The translations under genes and the position numbers were made by a program. Of a stretch of 64,000 nt of DNA, positions 1 to 61,302 are shown piece after piece. Location of the stretch: NCBI RefSeq assembly GCF_035594765.1, contig NC_085846.1, forward strand, positions 14,247,190 to 14,311,189. Direction: 5' to 3'. The notes below the pieces were generated by a model. That model did not search any database and was not told the DNA's origin. It was given only the letters and a program-made list of their open reading frames with translations. This DNA is from Anolis carolinensis (Eukaryota). Position 1 is the stretch's first letter. Every line of letters begins with the position of its first letter.

Positions 1-3000
1 GCTTGGGATGTCGAATGGTGGAGGGCTTGGGATATTTGAGGCTGGTGGCTTTTTTGCTTTGGATTCTTCCGACTCCTCATTGCTCTTGGAACTCTCTGAA
101 GCCTCCTCGTCCTCTTTGTCCTCATCTTCTTTCTCCTCGTCCTCTTTGTCTTCATCTTCTTTCTCCTCGTCCTCTTTGTCCTCATCTTCTTTCTCCTCGT
201 CCTCTTTGTCCTCATCTTCTTTCTCCTCTTCTTCTTCTGCCTTTTTCTTACGACGGTAGTACCTATAACCAAAGTGACAGAAATTGTAAATACAGCTTGT
301 CCTTAGAGATACAGAAAAAAGGCTGTCCTTTTTTTTAGCAGCACTCCCCAGGGAGTGGGGAAAAATTGATGGGGGAAATCATGACAAGTGCCTTCAATCT
401 TCACAATGTCTCATCTGTATTATCCACCTTGTAACAACCTCCTAAAGTGAACTCACCAAACCCCACCGCCTATGCCCAGCAAGAGGAAAAATGTCACCAG
501 CACTCCTGCCAGAACGTTAGCCCCTATATAAGAAAAAGAAAAAGGAGAGGAATCATACCTGGTGAAAATTTCAATGGGTACTATGACATAATTGCCTACT
601 TTTAGTACACCCTCTGTCTCAAATTGGTAAGGGCAGTCCCTATTAATCTTCTCTTTCAGCTGCTATTAAAATATTCCAGTTTCCCTCCTCCTCCTTTTCT
701 CTTTTGTCCCTCAGTTTATTTCAGTAGCTGCAAAATGAATTCAAAATGCCAAAGTAGAAGAGTAGAGGCGAAAGCAGAATCTTGCCCCTCCCAGGCAGCT
801 CAGGCAAAAGCAAACTGTTGCCACCTCTCCTGTTCTTTCACATCAATACCTTTTGCCATCTTGGTCATATTCTGTTGTTACTTGTCCCCATGTGTCCAAT
901 TTTCCATCTGTGAAATTTTGGAAGGTATGCTTAAATATTTCATTTCTTAGAAAGGTTAATGAAAACTCCTTTGAAGTTGTCAAGTCTTCAACAATATTCG
1001 CTTTTTTAAAGTGCTTACATAGCATACACTGGATCGCTTTGCAAGAACCAGATACTCTCCTTGTGAGTGATTTGTGACTATGCTAACAAGAACTTCTTGA
1101 ATACTGTGTCTTAAAGAATTTAAGATTGTTAATGGTGAACCTCATTGGTTCACTTAAATTATCGAGGCAAGAGAGTAAATTATTCCAAAGAAGAAAGGTA
1201 TAATTCTAGCTTAGGGTCTTGGATGCAGTTTTTAATTTCAGTGGCAGTTGGTAACTATGATGTAAATGGGAAAATGAATCTCCTTCAGGATTTAGTTTTT
1301 ACTTTAAAAAGGCTTTGCTAGTGTGGAAATGTATCCCTCAAATCGGCTTTGAAGAGCGGGTGCACAGAAAGATGAAAGTATGTTACGTTTGAAGGAGGGA
1401 TGGAGAGGCGGGGAAGAAGGAGAAAAGACACTTACCTGCACATACTACAGGGTCATTGCAAAAAACGTTGCTAACCTGGCAGTCAATGCAGTGAGCCACT
1501 TCATAGGGCCGAAAGCGAGACTTGGCTATGGAAATGTCAGAAAAAGGTTTGATCCAATCGTGAAATGGTTCAAACATTAAATAAAATTGTCATCGATTTA
1601 GATGAATGACAAACCATGGTTTGCGACTTCTGAACCAAACTAAATGGTTCTCCAACAATCTGAAGAAACAGTCTGGAATATGTTTGTGAATCATGGCTTG
1701 GTCAAGTTGTGGTTTGGTACCCCCATATGAATCAACAACCTTAGTCTAAGACATCTGGTTCAGAAGCTATTGCTTCTCAAGGAAGGTGAGTAAAGGAGGA
1801 AACAACACCTATCATGATTTTCTAGCATATCTGATTCAAAACCTCAAGTATGATTGGTTAGCACAAACCACAGTTTGTTATTACATCTGAAGCAACTCAA
1901 CCTACTGACACAAAGCTGTTATGAGTTGGATCCAGACTTTAGCAAACCCATTAAGTTGGAGCTAGGCCTAGATTTACTAAGAAAAGTCTTACGAAAATTA
2001 ACAGGACTCAAGGGAGTCAAATTTGAATCCCATTGTTTTCAGTATGTCTTTATGAAGTATGATTATGTTTGGATCCAATCCTTTATAGTGTAAGTTTATA
2101 GAGTCATGAGTTTCTTCATTTTGACTGGACACTAATGTGGTTTAGAATTGTCAACATATGCATGGATGTCTAAACAAGATCATCTTCATTCATTTCTAGT
2201 TTGTTTGGAATTATGTCTCCATCTGTACAACTCTGTATCCATAATCCTATGCTCTCCACATTGATGTCAGAGGAGCCAATATGAGACAGAAAGAGAGTAC
2301 AAATGTTCTTTTGACAACTACAAATGCACATTAATTTTCAGATGAGCTGTTCTCTTTTCAAGATTGGAGGATGTTTATCAGATTTTATCTCATGTCGTTT
2401 CACAGATCCTCAGCCTCTTTCTTATTGCCATCAGCCACCTTCATCATCTTTTGAAGTGGCAGCTGCATCACTCCATCCATCTCTCAGAACCTTGGTCTCT
2501 TCATCCTTGCATCTCATTAATTTGCTACTTGTGTTGTGTATGAGTCACAAGGCTGAGAGAGACTGAGGATCTGAGAGACAGACAAACTGTCTCTCAAACT
2601 GCAGCCACCATCTCAAATGTGGAAGTGTGTAGCTGGTGGCAAAAAATTAGGTTGTTTGAAAGTTGTATTCAGAACATTTTTGATTTAGGCCCTACTTGGG
2701 GCATTCTTAAGAACAGTAGTCCAAAAAGTAACATTTACAAGTTATGCCTATATTTTGCCAGTGTTGTGACTCCAAACAACAGGGAAGGGAATGGGTCTAG
2801 TTTGGAGAAGGGTAGAAAAATTGGTACCTCCTATCTAACATTTAGAATTCACATCACCCTTGACACTCACATATGCAGCTAAGCAAGCAAATTAAAAATG
2901 TACCCCAACGGACACCGACACATGTATGCACCCCAGGCAACAGATGGCCAGACAGAGGCACATCTGGTTTAGACAGATTGACTCACCGCAGGAAAGGCCG

Positions 3001-5832
3001 CAGACTGTGAGGGTTAAAACAGGAGGAGGTAGAGAAAAAAAGAACAAATTAGGAGAATCAGCAAATGGAATTTTCTCCAACACAATACTTGCAAAGCCTA
3101 TCCAGGCTTCCATTGCCCAATCCTACCCAACACAACAAAGTACGTTTTCCTTTGTTATGCTTCCATTACATTCTTATGGCTGATCTATATTCAGTATATA
3201 GTCCCAAGACTATTGAAGCCATCACTTTTTATTCTGAGCTCGGGATGAAGACAACAAAAGACGGGAGTTAGGATACTCTGGATCTAGTCTTCAACAGACT
3301 GTCAAATTTACTGGATGATGTCAAATTACACATTTTGTCTCAACCTGGCCAACCTCACAGGATTGTTGTGAAGATAAAGTGAGCGGAGTATAGAACCACC
3401 ACGTCCTCATTGGAAGAAAGGTGGAATATAGGTGAAACAAACTACCAAACCCCACATTAATAAATCCACCTTTATTCTCTGGAAGAACTGGCTGCATTTT
3501 CACAGCCACCTGAAGTGGAGTAAAAAAATCATAAATAGGCCTTGAAAGGGCATTAGTGAAAAGTTAACCATTCTGCCCACACACAAGTGTTGCTTTTGAG
3601 GATGTATCTACATGTAGAATAAATGCAGTTTGATATTACTTGGAGTCATAAGTTGTAGTTTTGCAAGGTTTTTAGCCTTATCTGCCAAATAGTGCTGATG
3701 CCTACAACTCCCGTGATTTTAGAGTCTAGTTTTTTCTCACTTTTCACAACAAATGGCAACAAGTAAAATGACTTAAAGCAAAGAATATCCGACTACCTCT
3801 GAACTCAGCATTAGCTGTGGAATATAACCATCCAACTATAGATGGTCCTAAATTCAATTGCTGGCATTTTTAGACAGGACTAAAAATCTTCATGAGAAAT
3901 GCTGTCTTGAGATAAAACAGCAATGTCAAAGTGCAAGTACTCAAAGCTAATCAAATTATTTCAGAACATAAAACAAACTTCCACAAGCTTCTTTCCTTGT
4001 TTTGTCATTAAATCAATCACTTAAAAGGTACTGCCCTTCCATGGCACCCAATATCTGGTGCCTGAGTTTGCTCTGTAATATCACAAACAGTCACTGTTGG
4101 CCAATGCAGACAGCAGTAATATAGATACTCAGCATAAAATATCTTCCTATGTATCTGGATCATTCATCAACACAAACTGAGGAATTTAGGATGGAATGGC
4201 ACTTACGTTGCTTCATAAAGGCATTGGATGCCTCTTCCAATTTCTTGACAAAGTTCTTTTTTTCCTCCTCTGCTGCACCTATCACATGTTCTGTGGGATT
4301 TAAAAAATGCACCGAAAAAGAGCAAAATACTTTATTGGACTAAAACTTCTATGATCTTTCAGCTAGTGGGATTGTGGGAGCTCTGGTCCCCCAGAATAAT
4401 TTCCAAGCTCTGAGTAATGAAGAAAAGATAATGCCTGGGTGAGATTTAGGAGCCAGATACTTTTATAGTTATGGCAAAAGTGCCACGATTGGTATTGAGT
4501 AGGAACTATGAATATGAACCTGGTATGGAAGTTTATGTCTAAGTTACGCATCTCTAATTGTGATCGTGATTTCCAGCTATTGTTGTTATAGAATAGGATT
4601 TATTGTGGACCTTCAAGTCATTTCCAACTTATGACGATCCTAAGGAAAACCTATCACACTTTTTTGCAAGTTTTATTCAGAAAAGGGTTGCCTTTGCTTT
4701 CTTCTGAAATTGAGAGAATGTGACTTGCTCAAATTCATCCAGATTATCACTTGACAAATGTATCAGAAATTATTATGGTGCAAGAAGATATTTTGATAGC
4801 AAGCGCAGCTGCCATCTAAGAATGTTTTCTCTGTCCAAAATAGCATCATTTCCTACCTTTTCCTCTTGTCGAAATAATATTTTCAATCCGACGAAAGAGT
4901 TGCCCAGCTTCACGCTCCATGTGATCTCGTTCTGCATAAATAAGGGCAGATAACACAAAAGTTGAGGCGCAGAGTTCCTGACCAAACCCTCCTTTTGGAA
5001 CATCATCTCCCGCTTTGAAGAAGACACTAGGAATAGTTTGACATATTGTTGTCATATTTATTTTAGACTTCTGTGCTTCCTGGAGATGACATAAATTGTA
5101 ATCCAATGCAACCAGCAGGTACCAGATCAGGGAAAGATGGTGTTTCAGAATTTAGAAAGTTATTGTTGAAGGTATTTATTTACAAGCTTGGTTCCCCACA
5201 AAATATTTATCATTGTTCTGTAGTTACATTTTTACAGTAAAGAGTTCTGATGGAAAGATACATGACCCATAGCTTCCAATCTATCTCTGAAATCAAGATC
5301 ACTAGCAATGCCTTTCCTAGCATCTCAAAAGATGTCGTGTGGCCTTTCTCTTCCATTATTTCTATGTTGAGTTGGTCAAAATGCAGCCTGTAAGCTCAAT
5401 GCAATCCCAGTACCAGCAGTCATTTTTGGCCCCTTCGAGAGGGGCATTTTTGCCATGTTTCTGGTGTCTTGGGTGACAAAATGCCATAGAGGGCATCAGG
5501 GGACAAACAACATTGAAGAAATGGCATTAAGGGAGATTGTAGTATATTGTACTGGATTGTTGCAAGGAGTGTGCCTAACACTCCTTTGTGGTCCCGTAGA
5601 CTCAAACCATTGCCCCGTCCTCATTTATACCCAAATATCTTCTGCCATTGGAAGTAGTGTCGCCCAGGAAGATGTTCACCAGGCTCCGAGCGGCTTCTGA
5701 ATCCTGACCAAGCAGCAGATTGGCATCGTAGCCAAAGCTCACTACAGCATCTGGCCAGCAGCGGAGACATGTGCCAGCCAACTGCATGGGCAGAGTCCAG
5801 GCCAGCAATCCTATCAGAGGTCCTTTAGCCAT
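1..5832 (-). CDS. TEX51: TEX51-like single-pass Izumo-domain sperm membrane protein; complement(join(<1..262,457..523,1436..1525,2987..3004,4207..4290,4857..4931,5631..5832)); 3' end outside the window
   Basis: GT-AG exons with matching phases splice to MAKGPLIGLLAWTLPMQLAGTCLRCWPDAVVSFGYDANLLLG...RRYL/ERDHMEREAGQLFRRIENIISTRGK/EHVIGAAEEEKKNFVKKLEEASNAFMKQ/LCGLSC/AKSRFRPYEVAHCIDCQVSNVFCNDPVVCA/GANVLAGVLVTFFLLLGIGGGVW/YYRRKKKAEEEEEKEDEDKEDEE... The motifs CLRCWP..YD, RDHxExE and CxDC..CNDPxxC match human TEX51 as recalled. An in-frame upstream ATG exists at 5889. Confidence 0.8.
103..229 (-). repeat. Coding tandem repeat, 4 copies plus a partial copy of a 30-bp unit encoding KEDEDKEDEE
   Basis: Unit ctcctcgtcctctttgtcctcatcttcttt repeated from 103 with a single substitution, inside the last exon of the TEX51-like gene. 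Confidence 0.9.
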
Positions 5833-6101
5833 GAAAAGCAGAACGAAAAGGCTAGAGCCAAACACTGCTTTGAGGAAGAACAGAAGCATGGAAGATCAAT
5901 AGGAACCTGGCATCAGTTCAGTGTTCCAGCTTCTACATAGCTGACATCACTTTGTGTTCTAGATCTAGCATCATAGAGACTCACACCACCATTTGCCTAT
6001 ACACTCGCTCTCCTTGGCAACCTTTTCTGACTGATCTCCTTGCTTTAAGAGAGGTTGTTTTTGCCATTGCGGCATTTGGTCCTGATTTTGGGGCTGCTTC
6101 C
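5833..6101. promoter_or_regulatory. Putative bidirectional promoter between TEX51-like and IZUMO3, with a CRE-like TGACATCA at 5942-5949
   Basis: Divergent start codons at 5832 (or 5889) and 6102; the CRE variant lies between them. Confidence 0.6.
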
Positions 6102-9100
6102 ATGGTGCCTTGGTTCCTATCAGTTTTCCTTCTGTTTCTGCTCTCCTTCAAAGCAGCATCTGGTTGTCTGCAATGTGACCGCCGCTTCTTGGATTCTGCA
6201 GCCACCGTCATGAAGGAAACATTGCCTGGAGACGTACCTGACCGTGAAATGCTTATTGAACGGCATGTTGAGGCCTTGTCAAATATTCATGGCACTTACC
6301 TCCGACAGAAATACGAAAGAGTGCTGGGTGCGACCTGAACAGAGATGCATCACTGGGGCTGGGAAAGCAGAGGAAAAGTGTAACATAATCAGAGTTTGGG
6401 AAAGTTACCTTTGGGGACTGTAGCTCCCAGAATGCCACAAACAAAGTGGCTGGTGTCCATGCTCACTGGAGGATCCTGGGAGCTGCAGCACCACAGTAAT
6501 TTTCCAAGCTCTGGCTTTAGCATCAGACATGTAGAGTTAAATCTGTGGATGTCTTCTTTTAGATGTACGTGGAGTGAAGGCTATTAAATCAGATATTATC
6601 AGTCGTCTGCGAGAGATAAAGGCCGGCACGTGGAAAGGTATGTTGGGAAGCTGGTGCATGTGGGATTTTCCCACTGAGATTGGATTGTGGGGAACTCTTA
6701 GCTTCATACAGTAAGTTTTCGTGTGGATACCATAAAGGTATTCTCCTAAATGTAGCATTCTCTTAGCTGTCTTGAACTACAGACCCAATTATCCTCATCA
6801 ACCCTGGCTGAAAATGAGAGCCAGCATATTTCAAGCTTGCCCTTCTTAAAAGTTGCAACAACACTAATAGCTTTCATCCTTTTGAACAAACTCTAATGTT
6901 TGGATACACATGTCCCAGTTTTCATCTCTGAAATGTTGGCAAGTACGTCCTCACTCCCTCTGCTTTGCTTTAGCTCCTTTTCCCTTCTTTCCACTTAGGG
7001 GTTTTCTTGTGGCAACTCTCCTTGTACGAGATTAGAACCTCCCTGCGACAGCGCATGCAACGGATGCTGGAGAAATTCGCCGACCTTGGTACCAATCGTG
7101 CAGGGAAGGGCAGACCCACCAGGGCCCAACTCCTTATAATCATTTGCTGTGTTTCCCAAACTCTGGTCTTCCAGGTGTGTTGGACATCCCTGATAATTAG
7201 CCAAGGCAGCTGAGGCTTCTGGGAGTTGAAGTCCAAAACATGGAGGACTAGAGCTTGTGAATCACTGAACTGATGGGGATTCCCTATATGTCAAGGGTTT
7301 GGTGACGCGTGTTGTTGAGCCAGGGCTACAACCTGTGATGCACCATGGGTTTCTTTTTCTAAAATGAATATGATAGCTAGGAAAGACAGACAAACAGAAA
7401 ATACAGTAGTCTCTCACTTATCCAACACTCGCTTATCCAACGTTCTGGATTATCCAACGCATTTTTTTAGTCAATGTTTTCAATATATCATGATATTTTG
7501 GTGCTAGATTCGTAAATACAGTAATTACTACGTAGCATTACTGCGTATTGAACTACTTTTTCTGCCAGATTTGTTGTCTAACATGTTTTGGTGCTTAATT
7601 TGTAAAATCATAACCTAATTTGATGTTTAATAGGCTTCTCTTTAATCTCTCCTTATTATCCAACATATTCGCTTATCCAATGTTCTGCCGGCCCGTTTAT
7701 GTTGGATAAGTGAGACTCTACTGTATACAGAAAAATAAGAAATACACAAGCAACGGCTAGAATCCTGTTGATGTCTTACATACATCTGAGTTCTGTGGTG
7801 AAAAGAGCTAGACATTGTTGACCAGTTGGAAATATCCATTCTATCCAAATTTGTGGCCCCAAAGTTGCACATAAGTTCCATTGTGTACGCATTTCAACAT
7901 ACAGATGCACACTGTAAATGCCAGTAGGAATTTTACATGCAGATGAGCATGTGCTTTCCTTGTGCAACATCACAATTCACTCACAAGGTGGCATTCTGCA
8001 ACCACCAAGTCACTCTCAGCATAAAGCTGTCCCACATTTCATCTGGGAAACATTAGAGGGTGTAATTAGTTTTATGACTATGAATTGTTGATTAACTAAC
8101 ATAAAACCATGAATTGTATAAGAACGAAGCAAGAATTCCTGCAAAATTATGATCCTAATCCAATCTTTTCTCTTCTCTTCCCACAATTCAGCTTGTTCAG
8201 AGGACTGTAGTAAGTATTGTGTCCCCCTTTCCCCTCCCCATTCCAAACACTTCTCTGAACCCTTCCAAGTTTTTTTAACCAGCCAGTCCCTGAAATCTTC
8301 TGTGTCTGAAATGTATGACACCCCAAGAGCTTTGGGTTCTTAGCCGTGATGTTCTTCCTTTTGGCAGCTGTGACTGAAGGTCCCATTTTGGACTGCTGGA
8401 CATGCTTACGGATTCTTGCCCAATGTTATGATGGAGAGCTCTGTGGAGGTATGCCATAGAAAAGTATGGTACCTAATATATGGCAGGACTTGGTACTGAG
8501 TTTGTGTGTGCATATACGTGCCTTCAAATCACCTTTTAATTGATAGCCCCAGGAATTTTGTAGGGTTTTCTTTGGCAAAGTATACTCAGATGTGGTTTGC
8601 TATTGCCGTCTTCTAAAATAATAGCATACAGAAACTGGTGTTCCTTGGTGATCTCCCATTCAGGCTTGACCATGCTTAGCTTCCAAGATCTGAAACTCTC
8701 TGTTAACTTCAGGTATTTATGTGGACACATTGGTAGTTTGGTAATACAGTATTCTGTTTCTTGTCTCAATTCCCAAAGCAATACAAGATGTTAATATGGT
8801 GTTCCTTTTGCTTCTTAGTGGAAGACAAACGTCTTGCAGAATACAATGAAGTTGTTCTTTACGTGTTCCTCGTTTGTGAGTCTGTGGTGTTGACCTCAAC
8901 TCTGCTTATGTGAGTAACTTGCTCCGCCATGTCCCTCCAGCCTCCTATGAAATTCGGGAATTCAAACTGAGGTTTTTGTTGATCTTCTTGTATCTCTTTG
9001 TAATTCTTTCCCAAAACCCCATTGATGGGAATTACTCTGTATACTCATGTATAAATCTTGAATTTTTAGTCAAAAATCAACCCCCAAAACCTGGGTTAAC

Positions 9101-9806
9101 CTACCCACAGGTCGATGTGTGTACTCTACCTCAATTCTTATCAGAGAATGTACCATTCTATTATCTGAGTGGTGTGGCGGAAGGCAAGAGCTTAATCCAC
9201 CCCAAAAGAAAGTAAAAGAAGCACCGATCCTCTCTACTCTCCCCACCGTAGAGCATCTTCTTGCTTTTTTAAATGTCTGGGTGGAGAAATAGTTGCAGTG
9301 GCAGCCAAGGGCAGCGGCCCCCTGAAATGACATTGGTTTTTCCCCTCTCTATGGAATGACCCTCAACGTATCTGTGGATCATATCAAGTTCCATAATTTT
9401 TTCCACAAAACCTTCTCTCGAGTTATACATGAGGTTGGGTTATACATGAGTATAAACAGTATGTGGTCCACCATATGTTATTGGACGGCAGGTCCCAGCA
9501 ATGACAGTCAAATGTGAAGGAAATGTTGGGAGTTGTAGTTTCACAACTTCTGGACAACTACTTACTACCTTGTAGCCCTATTTGGATTCATCAGGCTATG
9601 GCTGGAGAATGCTGAGATGGTAGAAAGACAACTAAGGGCCTTAAGGACGAGCTTAAAACTTTTCTCAATGAAGGACCATGTTTAGATGAGGCCTGATTTG
9701 TGTTCTAGAAGATGAAGGAACCTCTCCCCTTCCTAACTGTACCTCCAGATACATGGTGTGCATAAAACACACGAGGACAAGTCTGCAGAAAGCTTTGGCC
9801 CGTTAG
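6102..9806 (+). CDS. IZUMO3: Izumo sperm-egg fusion protein 3; join(6102..6327,6563..6637,6999..7088,8192..8209,8368..8448,8819..8909,9749..9806); 212 aa
   Basis: The 639-nt spliced ORF reads signal peptide, [119 protein letters not shown]..stop. TWKGVF, ACSEDC and [12 protein letters not shown] match human IZUMO3 as recalled. AATAAA at 9883-9888. Confidence 0.92.
7404..7723. mobile_element. Tc1/mariner(Tigger)-type MITE, family A. Other copies: 12185-12500, 12921-13242, 16339-16661, 22934-23211, 25368-25517, 26948-27374, 35798-36139
   Basis: TIR CAGTAGAGTCTCACTTATCCAAC...GTTGGATAAGTGAGACTCTACTG, TA target duplication and near-identical interiors. Confidence 0.85.
9037..9459. mobile_element. 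Older Tc1/mariner-type non-autonomous element; a related degraded copy lies at about 53200-53610
   Basis: Imperfect TIR ctgtatactcatgtataa / ttatacatgagtataaacag with a flanking TA. Confidence 0.5.
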
Positions 9807-10281: not shown

Positions 10282-13200
10282 CTAAATATATTGAAATAGC
10301 CAGTTCCTCCAGTAGACGATAATCCTGGAGAGAAGGGAGAGTTAGTGTCCCTCTGCCATCCTCCCTAAATCTTAGCCTTTAATGTGGCGACAAATTTATT
10401 TGAGATGGAGAGCTTGGTTGTTGGTGATACTCACGAGAATAACATCACCAGAAAGAGCACTGCACCCATACACAGAACAATGGCGACTCCAGTTCGGGCA
10501 ATATTGGGGTCCTTCAGGGGCTGTCCATAACGGAGGGACAGGCGTTCCTCGAAATCAACTGCAAGGGGAGAAGTTCCAGATTTGGTATTTGGATGGAAAC
10601 AGCAATTTCTAGTCTCTTCTTTCTACCACTTGAGCTCATACCCCAAGCAACTTAGAGGGCCCTTCCACACAGCTATATAACTCAGAATATCAAGGCATAT
10701 AATCCACAATATCTGCTTTGAACTTGATTATCTGTGTCCACACTGCCATATAATCTAGTTCAATGTGGATTTTATTCAGCTGTGTGAAAGGGGCCAGAGA
10801 CACTCCAGATTAGATTCCCAACACTTGGGGTCTGGTTCCTCTTCATTGGCCCTACGGAAGGAGGGGGACTCTCAGGAAAAGGACACGGCCTTGAAAAGCA
10901 TGTGTCTGCATGACTATAAATACCTCACATTTATGTGTTTCATTCTTATATGATACACTATCAAGAGCTGCACTTTTTGTAACATCACGAAGGCCTGAAA
11001 TATCACATTTGCTTGTCTCTAGGGGCGTATCTACACTGTAGAATCAATAATTTGACACCCCCTTCACTCAATGCTATGGAATTGCAGGAGCTTCTTGATC
11101 TTTATTTTAAAAAACCCATCTATGTCAGTCCTTCTCTTTGGCTTGGACAATACGAGCTCTTTGCTGACATTGCTGTGATTGGCCAACTTTGTTTTTTAAT
11201 TGCTTTCATGTTGGAGGACATAAATCCAGCAAGTCTTGAGCGAGGCACGCCATGATACTAATCTCCTCCTCTGCTGCATGCAGCCTCGTGCCTTCTGTCA
11301 CACGCCTGCTGTCCACCCACCACCTCATATTTCCAGCAGGACTTACCAAAGCACTGGCCTATAGTCATGCAGTAAGCCGCAGTCGCATGGCATCCTTTGC
11401 AATTCATCACTTGATAGTTGAGTGTGCCTGAAACCGGGGCAGGCCAGGAATAGGATGGAGGAAGGAAATATAGGTCACACCAGCCATAGAATAATCCCAG
11501 TCATATAAACACTGGCAGAGCCTATTCCCAAAACTCGTCCCACGGATTTACACAATTCCTAAGACAAAGGGAAGATTCTTTATACTTCTGAGATGTTTCA
11601 TGACATGATTCCATCTTAGGAATCCTGGGATTTGCAGTTTAGGAAGGGACCTTTAGAATCCTCAGCGAAAGAGTATTCCATAGGACATTGCCATGCAGCT
11701 AAAGGGGAAGGATACTGCTATAATTGTTTGTAGGAATTGTAATTGTTGGAAACTTTCTGAATGATACCCCCTCCCCGCGAAACATGGCTATAATGATATT
11801 TTGGGAGTTGTAGACCAAAATAATTATTTTTCTTAGATACTTTGGAGACAGCAGTGATTCGTTTTTTCTAGAGACACTCAGCCATTGACAATGCAAATGG
11901 GATTTCTCAGCTCACTACAGTTTGCTCCTTTGAATTCCTCCCCAACCACATCCCATGCACTCATAACAATAGCTTTTATTTGCCAGATCCCCCTCAAATA
12001 TTCTGCTTCAAATATTCTGAAAGTAGATTAAGTAAACTTACCACATATTTTTTTATTACAAGCTGTGAAGAATGAGAATCTGACATTAGTATACCATGGC
12101 AAAAAGATCCATTGTCCACAAGTCTATTTTCGCATCTCTCTCCACTCCCCTTCAATTCTAGAATCATGTGCTTGTATATACATACAGTAGAGTCTCACTT
12201 ATCCAACACTCGCTTATCCAACGTTCTGGATTATCCAACACATTTTTGTAGTCAATGTTTTCAATACATCGTGATATTTTGGTGCTAAATTCGTAAATAC
12301 AGTAATTAATACATAGCATTGCTGCGTATTGAACTACTTTTTCTGTCAAATTTGTTGTTAAACATGATGTTTTGGTGCTTAATTTGTAAAATCATAACCT
12401 AATTTGATGTTTAATAGGCATTTCCTTAATGCCTCCTTATTATCCAACATATTCGCTTATTCTGCCAGCCCGTTTCTGTTGGATAAGTGAGACTCTACTG
12501 TATAAAGGAGCCGCAGTGGCACACTGGGTTAAACCCTTGTGCCAGATGAACTGCTGACCTGAAGGTTGGGTTGCTGACCTGAAGGTGGCCGGTAGAAATC
12601 CGTGAGACAGGGTGAGCTCCCATCTGTCAGCTCTAGCTTGCGGGGACATGAGAGAAGCCTCCCAGCTATCACATCTGGGCATCCCTTGGGCAACGTCAGG
12701 AGAGAATGCTTCTGGAAAATGGCCATACAGCCAGGAAAACTCACAGCAACCCAATATTTTCACTGTTAAAGGTGGGAGGTGGGAAGTCTATTTTGATCTT
12801 GGATTATCATTTTTATTATTGCTTTTCAATAGGGCAGGTGGGGGAAACTAGTTTAAATGGATATGCATAGCGCTGTAAGTCATAGAGGGGAAAATTATTG
12901 TCTATATCAATTGTACAATACAGTAGAGTCTCACTTATCCAACACTAGCTTATCCAACGTTCTGGATTATCCAACGCATTTTTGTAGTCAATGTTTTCAA
13001 TACATCATGATATTTTGGTGCTAAATTCGTAAATACAGTAATTACTAGATAGCATTACTGTGTATTCAACTACGTTTTCTGTCTAATTTGTTGTATAACA
13101 TGATGTTTTGGTGCTTAATTTGTAAAATCATAACCTAATTTGATGTTTAATAGGCTTTCCTTAATGCCTCCTTATTATCCAACATATTCGCTTATCCAAC

Positions 13201-16065
13201 ATTCTGCCGGCCCATTTATTTTGGATAAGTGAGACTCTACTGTAATACTTATATTGCTAGAAAAAATAATAGTTTTTTTTAAAAAAAAGGCTATTTTCTG
13301 CCTTGAGCACTCAGTCCTCAAAAGGCCTGCCGAAATACAAAGGTCTCCAATTATGGGACTTAGAGAGAACCCAATACCTTTCACCTGGTGTTCTTTTAAT
13401 GCCCGCTTCAGCTTCAGGGTGGTAGCCTTCCGGAAAGCGACCAGTTTTTCCAGCAGATCCTCATCTGGGAACAGAATGAGAAGATGCGTGGCTGGGGAGA
13501 GGTCCCCTGCAAGGTTGGTTCAGGAACCAAAAGAGACTTCCTGGCAAAATAGCATATTGGTTAGACCAGGGCAAACTTGGGCCCTCCAGGTGTTTTGGAC
13601 TTCAACTCCCACCATTCCTGGCCTCAGGCCCTTTCCTTTTCCCCCTCAGCCGCTTAAGCGGCTGAGGGGGGAAAGGAAGGGGCCTGAGGCCAGGAATGGT
13701 GGGAGTTGAAGTCCAAAACACCTGGAGGGCCCAAGTTTGCCCATGCCTGGGAGAGACAGCTTGGGAACAATCCCAATATAAAGGCACTTTAGGAAAGGAG
13801 GAGTTAATATCCTCACCTGTAAGTGTTGTTTTAAGGAGTTCTGCAGTGGTGGCTCTCACCTCCACGATCAAGTCGTCAACTTTTCTCTTAACTAGGAAGA
13901 ACACAAAGATGCCCCTTACCCAAATTATATAAAGAAAGCACACTGCACCTCTGAGTATATGACAGAAGACGAGAGTCTGCAACAAATAATGGCACATTGC
14001 ACTTTCCCAGTTTAATTTGATATTTTTTTAAAATCATATAATGGAGTGGTTAGAAGGTTCAATTAAGAACGTGGAAGCCCAAGTTCTAGTTCCTACCAAA
14101 ACATGAACTAAATGTTCTTCAGCTAGTTCTCCTCCCTGCCAGTCCATAATTGTCAGTCCAGAGGTTTTATGGGTCAACCCTGAGACCTAGGGTTGGCCCC
14201 TATTTAATGTCATGTAGTGAAACACATTACTGATGGCATTAAGTGAAATGTATCACCGGAAGAACATATTTTCCGGTTTGGAAATTAAGACAGAAATCTG
14301 TTCAAAGTGAGGTGATAATTCCTTCTCACTGACATGGGAAAATAGGACAAGGAATTGTTAACCCATCCCTTTTGTGTCTATCCCAGAGGTAAATGCAGAG
14401 CGGAGTGGAAGGTGAATCCTGGCACTGTAGTGACTGATAGGGAACTTTTTTTCATGAGAAACTGGTGTGAGAGAACTGGCTGTCTGCAAGGACGTTGCCC
14501 AGGGAACGCCCGGATGTTTTGATGTTTTTACCATTCTTGTGAGAGGCTTCTCTCATGTTGCCGCATGGAGCTGGAGCTGATAGAGGGAGCTCATCCCCAC
14601 TCTCCCCAGGTTGGATTCAAACCGGCAACTTTCAGGTCAGCAACCCAACCTTTAAGTCATCAGTCCTTCCAGCACAAGGGTTTAACCCGCTGCACCATCG
14701 GGGGCTCCCATAGGGGACTGAAAACCTAACAAAGTCGATATCTAGATTCTCCTTAGAATCCGATGAAACTTTGGAAAGTGTACCAAACTCTTGCACTCCC
14801 AAGTCCTTGCTGCTTGTCTGGACCTAAATGGGAAAATGTGCACCTTCGCCTGAAGATGGACCTTGAAAACTGGAAACTCAGGATCTGGGATCTGGCAACA
14901 TTACTCTGTCTGCTTGGCTATAAGTATACAGTAGAGAGGAAGAAATGTCATTGGAGGAAAAGTGTGATATAAGTAGAATCAATAAAATGCCATGCAGTTC
15001 AATGTAGTTAAACTTCATTATATGAGTCTGTACCAGGCATGGGCAAACTTTGTCCCTCCAGGTGTTTTGGACTCCAACTCCCACCATTCCTAACAGCCTC
15101 AGGCCCCTTCGCTTAAGCGGCTGAGAGGGAAAAGGAAAGGGCCTGAGGCTGTTAGGAATGGTGGGAGTTGGAGTCCAAAACATCCGGAGGGACAAAGTTT
15201 GCTCATGCCAGGTCTATACTGATAGAGCCTTTAAGCAGAGGAAAGGTTTATGAAATAAGGAGTGTTTCATACCTGTGGGAAGACAGAAATCTTGCTGACA
15301 TTGTCAGTTAGTTACCTTTTAATTATGATCCTTTCTATTGTCTAAAAAGTTTGTAAATTGCCTTAAGTCACAATATTGGAGAAAGTCGGGGCATTCATCT
15401 CCAGCAGTAATAAGTATTTATCCCCCCCCCCCCTTTTTTAAATACTAACTTCTGTCAAAGTGCCTTAAAAAAACTCCTGTGCTGATGTGGTCTAAAAGTG
15501 GATTTAATTTTTAAAATGTGCTGAGAACCACCCTTTCACTAAGTTAATTACATGGCTCAAGCAGGATGAAGATGTCATGAGTTAGTGATGTCTCAAGCAC
15601 GAGCTAATAACTATCCGTATAATTCTTGCATGAATTGATGAATTTCACTTTGCAATTCACAAAGTACATTAAAGAAACGTTACCACATCTTCTCAGCAGT
15701 GAGATGGGAGAAAGATACACGTTGGGGACACAAAGCGTGAATTCTTCACACCGTCACAACATATCCACCGAAGCAACCCCAAAGTTTTGATTCTAATTTC
15801 TGACCACGCAAAATGGAGCCAAGGCCATACCGGCAAGGCCAGGAAACTGGTTGTTGGCGTAGTTGTAGAAAAAGTTTTTTTCAAGGTCTTCGAGGAGAAC
15901 TTCAGCCCGTCCCTTGATGCGGGTGTCATGGATCTGACGCGGCACGACTATCGTCCGGAGTTTTTCCACATTTTCCTTGAACTGTTCATCACATTGCAAG
16001 CAGCCCAAGGCAGCTGTGGGCAAACAGAGCAGAGACAACACAAATGGAAGACCTGAATCAAGCAT
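10282..16065 (-). CDS. IZUMO2: Izumo sperm-egg fusion protein 2; complement(join(10282..10324,10435..10558,11347..11427,12042..12062,13378..13464,13817..13891,15831..16065)); 221 aa
   Basis: The 666-nt spliced ORF reads MLDSGLPFVLSLLCLPTAALGCLQCDEQF..RAEVLLEDLEKNFFYNYANNQFPGLA/VKRKVDD../DEDLLEKLVAFR..HQVK/ACNKKIC/GTLNYQVMNCKGC..C..QCF/VDFEERLSLRY..TM helix/IIVYWRNWLFQYI. It aligns with human IZUMO2 (FFRDYA, DEPLLEELV, ACNPKLC, CFVD) and is head-to-head with the myosin gene as IZUMO2/MYH14 are in human. Minus-strand AATAAA at 10106-10111. Confidence 0.92.
13567..13749. mobile_element. Fully palindromic hAT MITE. Other copies: 15034-15211, 27814-27943, 33153-33935 (interrupted), 35283-35413, 46151-46284, 51771-51964, 57014-57207; half copies near 22580, 37775 and 44102
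   Basis: CAGGCATGGGCAAA...TTTGCCCATGCCTG ends; the longer copies fold about CCGCTTAAGCGG. 8-bp TSDs include gtgtagag (46143/46285) and atgtatag (33145/33936). Confidence 0.85.
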
Positions 16066-18004
16066 GGCGCAAGCCAAGAAAGTTGCTCTTTCGAGGTTCT
16101 GTAGGAAATGACATCATAATGGAGGGTGTTGCATTATTCTCAGCACAGAAATTGAGAAAGTTCTTTTATGGGATTTTGCCTCTCAGGACCCATCTACACT
16201 GCCATATCACACAGTTTCAGAATGTAGATTAACTGCATTGGACTGGACAGTATGGCAATGTAGGCCTCTTCTACATTGCCATATAATCCAGATGATCTAA
16301 TCAGATAATCCACATTATTTTATTATTTATTTACTGTACAGTAGAGTCTCACTTATCCAACACTCGCTTATCCAACGTTCTGGATTATCCAACACATTTT
16401 TGTAGTCAATGTTTTCAATACATTGTGATATTTTGGTGCTAAATTTGTAAATACAGTAATTACTACTTAGCATTACTGCGTATTGAACTACTTTTTCTGT
16501 CAAATTTGTTGTATAACATGATGTTTTGATGCTTAATTTGTAAAATCATAACCTAATTTGATGTTCAATAGGCTTTTCCTTAATGCTTCCTTATTATCCA
16601 ACATATTCGCTTATCCAACATTCTGCCAGCCTGTTTATGTTGGATAAGTGAGACTCTACTGTATTTATATTCCACCCTTCTCACACCAAAGGAGACTCAG
16701 GGCGGATCACAATGCACATATACATGGCAAATATTCAATGCCATTAGACATATGACATATAGACAGACACAGAGGCAACATTTTCCAGCTTCATGAGGGT
16801 ATACTCGTTTCCAGCCACAGGGGGAGCTGCCGCTTCATCGTCCACTTGTGACACCGAGTCCTTGATGGAGTACTTCCTCATTCCTTTCCGCACGCTGCTG
16901 GAAGTTTTTACAGTGTTGTAAATTAGTTAAATTAGCCTCCCTGCATAAAGCAGTACTTAAATTTTCTACTCGACAGATGCAACTGTCTTTTGAGCTGCTT
17001 AGGTCAACAGCAAGCTAGGCTATTAAATGGTCAGGAACTCAATCCGACCCGGGCTTCGATCTCATGACTTCTCGGTCAGTAGTGATTTATTGGAGCAGGC
17101 AACTAACCATCTGCGCCACAGCCCAGCCCTTCCTTGTACTGGATTATCTAAATCTATACTACCACAATCTAGTTCAAATCACATAATCTGGATTTTGTAT
17201 GACAGTGTAGAAGGGGCCATAAATTCATATAATCCAGTTCAACACAGTTCAATCTGCATTATATGAGTCTAAGCTGACCATATAATGCAGTTCAAATAGT
17301 GTTATAAGGTCATGTAGATGAGACCTCAAGCTCTTCTCAAGTTTTGGTAAAGTTTGATGTTTCGAAGTGATGGTAAATTTGTGGCCTCCTACATTTTGTT
17401 ACCTCCACTTTTTCCATATTCAGTGCCATGCTAGTTGTATCTGTTGGGAATTTTAGTCCCACAATAATTCACAAATTGTCCAGACTTTTGGAGCTAAGCA
17501 TCTGTGAACATGAACACCAGATTTATTGTCACCGATCCTTGTTTAAGCTCATGGATCACACAAAATGCCCAATAAGAAGGCTGTGTGTAATTACATGATC
17601 ATATTCCAGAGACATACACATTATGATTAGGTTTCATTACTTATAAAGCATTTTAAAAATGTATTAAATATGTATTTATTCCAAGTGGTTTACAGATCAA
17701 GACAACAGATAGATGGATGGTTAGAAAAAAAGAAAATTGCACTTTCAATCTTACAATCTAAAAGACGTTATATGAAAGGAAAATGTAGGGAGGAAGCACA
17801 GTAAAGCAGCTGCCATGGACAACAGGCATGTGGTGCTATGGAAAGTAAAAAATATTCATTATTAATATTTTTAGCCTGAACAAAACCACTGTTCAGGTGG
17901 GCAAGAATTAATCTTGAGTATAAGAGCAAATGGCAATGTTTTCAAACACAAATACTACAGTTTTGTGAGAACAGAAGCATCAGCCTAAGTATTAGGTCTC
18001 TTTG

Positions 18005-50716: not shown

Positions 50717-51367
50717 TAATAATAATAATATTTATTTATATTCCGCTTTATTTTCCCGAAGGGACTCAGAGCGAATTACAGTACACATAAAAGGCAAACA
50801 TTCAGTACCTTTTACACAACAATGACATGCAATACATGTACACAAACAAAGGTAAAGACCTTTGCCTTTCATCTCCTGTGTCTGGAGGTGATGCTCAACT
50901 CCAACCATGGAGAGGTGCTCTTGTTCCATTTTCCATGCTGAGGAGCCTGTTGTCCGTAGACATCTCCAATTGTGTTTTGCCGGCATGTCTGCCCTTTTAC
51001 CTTCCGCCGAGGCGATCCCTATTGATAATAATAATAATAATAATAACTTTATTTTTATACCCCGCCCCATCTCCCCGAAGGGACTCGGGGCGGCTTACAT
51101 GGGGCCTTGCCCGATAAAACAATCAAATATCAAAACACAGCAATATTGATCTACTTGCATTGCATGTCTTCGAACTGCTAGGTTGGCAGAAGCTAGGGCT
51201 TACAGTCAGGAGCTCACCCCGACTTGCGGCTTCAAACTGCCAACCAGCAGATTTCCTGCAGCTAGCGGTTTAACCCTATGGCAGAGTGTAGGTGTAGGAC
51301 CGTTGTAGAACTCAGTCCCAAGAATGATAACCTGTCTAAACTTTTCCTTTCCGTTTCTTTCCCAGCC

Positions 51368-61302
<9,935 letters not shown>

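What the first reader, a model, noticed from the sequence alone, without database searches (positions are those of the whole stretch)
457..5832. TEX51 looks like a cryptic Izumo-family paralog: same exon-phase skeleton, microexon and 8-Cys spacing
Seen: coding exon sizes are 202/75/84/18/90/67/>262 (TEX51-like), 226/75/90/18/81/91/58 (IZUMO3) and 235/75/87/21/81/124/43 (IZUMO2), all with intron phases 1,1,1,1,1,2. Each has CxxC after the signal peptide, a Cys-pair microexon (CGLSC / CSEDC / CNKKIC) and CxxC-x6-C-x5-C. Amino-acid identity is otherwise low. Inference: TEX51, not named as an IZUMO gene, folds as the Izumo four-helix bundle. The human sequence as I recall it lacks the CxxxC microexon peptide, so the lizard form may be the more ancestral.
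Basis: partly seen in the sequence, partly recalled or inferred. Interest (0 to 1): 0.85.

Follow-up and report, generated by a model that had tools for sequence, protein, structure and literature searches.

The report
Lizard TEX51, a known Izumo-fold gene
This is a real, spliced lizard gene for the sperm membrane protein TEX51, whose kinship with the Izumo fertilisation proteins was published in 2025; the less familiar part is that in lizards and snakes it sits head-to-head with IZUMO3, beside IZUMO2, with the same exon layout.

Summary
All seven coding exons, their phases (1,1,1,1,1,2) and the 18-nt Cys-pair microexon are in the sequence. Contigs from one probable RNA run support every junction.

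The ectodomain model (pLDDT 82.8) hits IZUMO1, SPACA6 and TMEM95 first. Squamate orthologues are named TEX51 in NCBI records.

The headline inference is already published. TEX51 was placed in the IST (IZUMO1-SPACA6-TMEM95) superfamily, including lizards and snakes (PMC12615630); a second knockout paper notes its IZUMO1-like fold (PMC12917576). IZUMO2-IZUMO3 adjacency in reptiles is also known (PMC4807442).

Not found in the papers searched: an IZUMO2-IZUMO3-TEX51-epsin array in five squamates; a conserved 252-269 nt head-to-head TEX51/IZUMO3 spacer; and a shared intron skeleton. These argue for origin by tandem duplication.

The claim that humans lost the microexon is untested and doubtful. 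A gecko annotation omits the microexon although the genome has it. No mammalian TEX51 sequence was reached, so orthology rests on names and Atlas hits.

The scan's other note on this cluster is the same DNA.

The parts
5631..5832 (-). TEX51 coding exon 1 (202 nt): signal peptide, first CxxC, helices 1-2; phase-1 donor
   Evidence: junction; homologues
4857..4931 (-). TEX51 exon 2 (75 nt), helix 3
   Evidence: 75 nt in four other squamates
4207..4290 (-). TEX51 exon 3 (84 nt; 90 nt in other squamates), helix 4
2987..3004 (-). TEX51 18-nt microexon, CxxxC (CGLSC)
   Evidence: included in X4 contig; present in L001-L004
1436..1525 (-). TEX51 exon 5 (90 nt): beta-hinge with CxxC-x6-C-x5-C
457..523 (-). 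TEX51 exon 6 (67 nt): transmembrane helix; phase-2 donor
   Evidence: hydropathy
1..262 (-). TEX51 last coding exon (runs off the window): basic stop-transfer segment, acidic repeat, PSPP repeats of the cytoplasmic tail
   Evidence: join seen as loose ends
5833..6101 (.). 269-nt head-to-head spacer between the TEX51 and IZUMO3 start codons; conserved blocks at 5942-5949 (CRE-like), 5957-5973 and 6009-6021 (X-box-like); likely bidirectional promoter (inference)
6102..9806 (+). IZUMO3-like gene, exons 6102-6327, 6563-6637, 6999-7088, 8192-8209, 8368-8448, 8819-8909, 9749-9806
   Evidence: Pfam IZUMO hits on single exons; junctions not tested with reads
10282..16065 (-). IZUMO2-like gene, exons 15831-16065, 13817-13891, 13378-13464, 12042-12062, 11347-11427, 10435-10558, 10282-10324
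   Evidence: junctions not tested with reads

Best explanation
The gene is the squamate orthologue of TEX51, an Ig-less member of the IST (Izumo-fold) superfamily. Shown: it is spliced as modelled and encodes a signal peptide, an 8-cysteine ectodomain, one transmembrane helix and an acidic, proline-rich tail. Predicted: the ectodomain is an Izumo-type four-helix bundle plus beta-hinge. Inferred from IZUMO1 disulfides (my knowledge): counting from the ATG at 5832, C22-C139 and C25-C142 tie the first helix to the hinge, and the two microexon cysteines C122 and C126 pair with C149 and C155, so the microexon is structural. Inferred from mouse knockouts: it works in spermatids as a membrane organiser that helps shape and anchor the acrosome, probably by associating through its bundle with itself or other IST proteins, rather than as the egg-binding or fusion factor. 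Inferred from gene anatomy: TEX51, IZUMO3 and IZUMO2 arose by tandem duplication, and TEX51 and IZUMO3 share a short bidirectional promoter.
Confidence: 0.85

Rival explanations
1. The gene is an IST protein but a reptile-specific duplicate of IZUMO3 that automated pipelines named TEX51; mammalian TEX51 is a separate paralogue.
For: It is adjacent to IZUMO3. The best Atlas feature hit is IZUMO3. Exon 1 is closer to IZUMO3 than to IZUMO2 (z 11.7 against 1.7). Exons 3 and 4 have the same sizes as in IZUMO3.
Against: IZUMO2 and IZUMO3 exon 1 are much closer to each other (z 26.7) than either is to this gene, and the TEX51/IZUMO3 exon-1 match covers only the signal peptide and CxxC. The Atlas structure search ranks the TEX51 cluster first. 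PMC12615630 reports PSI-BLAST hits of TEX51 in lizards, snakes and turtles. From memory, unverified: mammalian TEX51 shares the CLRCWP motif and an RDH-x-E-x-E motif with this gene.
Confidence: 0.08
2. In squamates the protein acts directly in sperm-egg adhesion or fusion, like TMEM95, rather than in sperm head building.
For: It has the same Ig-less architecture as TMEM95. Mouse knockout sperm fertilise zona-free eggs less well. It has a long, conserved-style cytoplasmic tail that could be regulated.
Against: Mouse knockouts still fertilise, and show acrosome and head defects. There are no lizard functional data.
Confidence: 0.15
3. The resemblance is convergent: a small disulfide-rich helical protein with generic phase-1 introns, not a descendant of an Izumo gene.
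For: Exons 2 and 3 show no sequence similarity above shuffles between any pair of the three genes. Phase-1 introns are common in extracellular proteins (my knowledge).
Against: Identical 8-Cys spacing, a 75-nt exon 2 in all three genes, a microexon at the same place, intron positions fixed relative to the cysteines, physical adjacency, and IST-only top fold hits.
Confidence: 0.02

Closest known systems
Mammalian TEX51 (IST superfamily member, PMC12615630; PMC12917576)
   Same: Signal peptide, four-helix bundle, beta-hinge, double CxxC, single transmembrane helix, no Ig domain. Squamate orthologues carry the same name in NCBI records.
   Different: The lizard protein has a 80-120 aa acidic and proline-rich tail; human isoforms are only 52-203 aa in all. 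The mammalian gene lies apart from IZUMO2 and IZUMO3 (human chr2 per the paper; 19q13 and 9p21 for the other two from my knowledge). Microexon status in mammals was not tested.
IZUMO2 and IZUMO3 (Izumo family, Pfam PF15005)
   Same: Eight-cysteine pattern, seven coding exons, phases 1,1,1,1,1,2, 75-nt exon 2, Cys-pair microexon, type I topology, adjacent genes.
   Different: About 15-26% per-exon identity; Pfam IZUMO below cut-off; much longer tail.
IZUMO1, SPACA6 and TMEM95 (solved IST structures)
   Same: Top three structural neighbours over nearly the whole ectodomain.
   Different: No Ig-like domain (IZUMO1 and SPACA6 have one); no helix 1-2 disulfide of SPACA6 and TMEM95; 11-16% identity; those three are essential for fusion, mouse TEX51 is not.

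Membership tests
IST superfamily (PMC9482655) | Distorted four-helix bundle of Izumo topology | tested here: met
IST superfamily (PMC9482655) | Triangular face with a short perpendicular N-terminal helix | tested here: inconclusive
IST superfamily (PMC9482655) | Two CxxC motifs, one on the first helix and one at the tip of the hinge hairpin | tested here: met
   C41/C44 and C158/C161 of P0024; strands 115-119 and 124-128 of the model flank the second motif; conserved in all orthologues
IST superfamily (PMC9482655) | The two CxxC motifs are disulfide-bonded to each other | not testable with these tools
   Inferred from IZUMO1 and SPACA6; the tool gives no atomic distances
Izumo family in the narrow sense (IZUMO1-4) | Eight conserved cysteines with four helices between the motifs | tested here: met
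   Eight ectodomain cysteines in P0024; definition from PMC8999778
Izumo family in the narrow sense (IZUMO1-4) | Pfam IZUMO domain PF15005 above its gathering score | tested here: not met
   Best E 0.0027 among 14 orthologues, none for this protein; 13.7 and 15.6 bits against a cut-off of 25. Filed under IST, not as a fifth IZUMO by Pfam
TEX51 orthologue group | Best database hits are annotated TEX51 | tested here: met
   Nearly all named hits are squamate testis-expressed protein 51; the rest are hypothetical or uninformative names
TEX51 orthologue group | Reciprocal best hit or clade with mammalian TEX51 | tested here: inconclusive
   No mammalian sequence retrieved; Atlas TEX51 cluster first by structure, second by features
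TEX51 orthologue group | Testis- and spermatid-specific expression | not testable with these tools
   Spliced contigs exist in run X4, but tissue labels are coded

The most novel reading that the evidence does not exclude
The squamate IZUMO2-IZUMO3-TEX51 array is the ancestral amniote arrangement, later dispersed in mammals. TEX51 and IZUMO3 are co-transcribed from one roughly 260-nt bidirectional spermatid promoter and act together, perhaps as partners, in acrosome building; this would explain their similar mouse knockout phenotypes. The divergent mouse lncRNA Gm44577 could be what remains of that promoter's other direction. The Cys-pair microexon may be present but unannotated in mammals, so the reference TEX51 proteins used for modelling may be incomplete.
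Probability: 0.3. Interest if true: 0.5.

Novelty: already known. Interest (0 to 1): 0.27.

Why it matters
The main claim is correct but published, so it is a good positive control for the scan rather than a discovery. The extra value is modest. The gene-structure and synteny evidence turns a similarity of predicted shapes into a case for common descent. It suggests a testable TEX51-IZUMO3 co-regulation. It also warns that database TEX51 models can lack a structurally important 6-codon exon.

Tried and rejected
Pfam on single TEX51 exons found nothing relevant. PDB sequence search with a squamate profile found no IST protein. Three word-index searches and one full phmmer search reached squamates only. 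The look-up of encoding contigs had no record for P0015 or P0013. The paper's supplements are not held. Paper searches for IZUMO plus microexon found nothing; IZUMO3 plus TEX51 found only PMC12615630, which has no mention of synteny, cluster or intron. Weak Pfam hits (hemerythrin, FAM163, TMEM154) and the CMV IE1 rows were rejected as generic helix or transmembrane matches. The microexon as an artefact was rejected.

Left out under the operators' notes: the joined spliced model was never sent to a search tool; searches were exon by exon by reference, and full-length work used database proteins returned by the tools (P0024 and others) by id. 

Full report
Observation. The minus-strand gene has coding exons 5631-5832, 4857-4931, 4207-4290, 2987-3004, 1436-1525, 457-523 and a last exon from 262 off the window end. 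All introns are GT..AG with phases 1,1,1,1,1,2 and an open frame. The two neighbours have the stated sizes and the same phases. The CxxC-x6-C-x5-C motif occurs once in each gene; shuffled sequence gives 0.01 on average.

Transcript support. Contigs of run X4 join 5631 to 4931, 4857 to 4290 and 1436 to 523. Between 4207 and 1526 they carry the letters of 2988-3004 at depth 168, which is the microexon. The 457 to 262 join appears as loose ends in X4 and X10. X4 is only guessed to be RNA and its tissue is coded, but precise GT..AG skips at high depth over low intronic depth are what a spliced transcript gives. It is one run, and contigs cannot exclude minor skipping. A database protein, P0024, contains every exon peptide.

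Identity. Exon 1 alone finds ten representatives, and the named ones are squamate proteins, mostly called testis-expressed protein 51. Full-length searches add Pogona, Paroedura, Podarcis, Zootoca, Sceloporus and several snakes under that name. No mammal or turtle was reached, so orthology was not tested reciprocally. The Atlas puts its TEX51 cluster first by structure (TM 0.49/0.51) and second by features (0.90, behind IZUMO3 at 0.94). PMC12615630 reports TEX51 in lizards, snakes and turtles by PSI-BLAST. The host is probably an iguanian lizard (exon 1 is 72% identical to Sceloporus); the species was not established.

Surroundings. The order IZUMO2-like, IZUMO3-like, TEX51, ENTH-domain gene is the same in Pogona, Paroedura, Gekko and Pantherophis; the ENTH gene ends in an epsin-type NPF motif. 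TEX51 and IZUMO3 are head to head, with 252-269 nt between start codons in all five species. That spacer has 54 invariant columns and a run of 9, against 7-27 columns and runs of at most 3 in eight intron controls. Two conserved blocks resemble a CRE variant (5942-5949) and an RFX X-box (6009-6021). Reading them as CREM and RFX2 sites of a bidirectional spermatid promoter is my inference, and part of the spacer is untranslated leader. I found no paper on this linkage, within a library that lacks most subscription journals.

Exon skeleton. In the other squamates TEX51 internal exons are 75/90/18/90, IZUMO3 75/90/18/81 (78 in Pogona exon 2), and IZUMO2 exons 3-5 are 87/21/81. Exon-by-exon sequence similarity is detectable only in the cysteine-bearing exons 1 and 5; exons 2 and 3 are at shuffle level even between IZUMO2 and IZUMO3. 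Shared intron positions plus adjacency are thus the best evidence for descent by tandem duplication. IZUMO2 and IZUMO3 look closer to each other than to TEX51. Whether the array is ancestral for amniotes needs outgroups that I could not fetch.

Microexon. It is present with strong splice sites in all five genomes. The Gekko protein model P0008 lacks it, yet the genome has it at L003 15209-15226. Absence from a database protein is therefore no evidence of loss. Folding the natural microexon-less gecko sequence leaves the bundle confident but drops the hinge to pLDDT 40-48, against 81-87 with the microexon. This suggests a structural role, though the two proteins are from different species.

Mechanism. 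Shown: splicing, topology motifs, conservation, gene order. Predicted: the Izumo fold. Inferred: disulfide pairing as in IZUMO1, with the microexon cysteines locking the hinge; a role in the spermatid acrosomal membrane as in mouse; co-regulation with IZUMO3. A direct fusion role in lizards is not excluded but has no support.

Limits kept. The joined model was not sent to any search tool; searches were exon by exon, or used database proteins by id. No human contig was fetched or compared.

Verdict: observation confirmed; main inference correct but already known; modest new comparative detail. Interest 0.27.

Noticed in passing
window 5833-6101: Conserved 252-269 nt head-to-head spacer between TEX51 and IZUMO3 in five squamates, with CRE-like and X-box-like blocks. 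Mouse Tex51 has a divergent lncRNA (Gm44577) per PMC12615630.
   Followed up: partly
L003 15209-15226: The Gekko kuhli genome has the TEX51 microexon, but the annotated protein P0008 omits it. P0013, P0016 and P0017 also lack it; P0004 and P0006 skip other exons.
   Followed up: partly
window 5887-5889: In-frame upstream ATG adds 19 hydrophobic residues in database protein P0024; not shared with most squamates. It lies inside the X4 exon-1 contig.
   Followed up: partly
window about 90-235: Roughly 30-nt tandem repeat coding an acidic E/D/K tract in the TEX51 cytoplasmic tail, followed by PSPP repeats; tail length varies from 81 to 121 aa among squamates.
   Followed up: partly
window 455-2531: Run X10 has one unspliced contig across introns 4-5 yet shows the 457 to 262 join; X14 is similar (459-1921). 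It could be a partly processed or internally started transcript. Unexplained.
   Followed up: no
window about 7400-7725, 12185-12505, 12920-13245, 16340-16660: Four copies, seen by eye, of a roughly 320-nt element with inverted ends (MITE-like) in the IZUMO3/IZUMO2 region.
   Followed up: no
   Followed up: partly
window 51278-51745 (+): First coding exon of a myosin heavy chain (Myosin_N and Myosin_head hits), consistent with MYH14, the neighbour of human IZUMO2 (my knowledge).
   Followed up: partly
L001 20309-27728, L002 20048-26329, L003 22620-27484, L004 26605-32381: An epsin-type ENTH gene lies tail-to-tail with TEX51 in all four loci; which epsin was not determined.
   Followed up: partly
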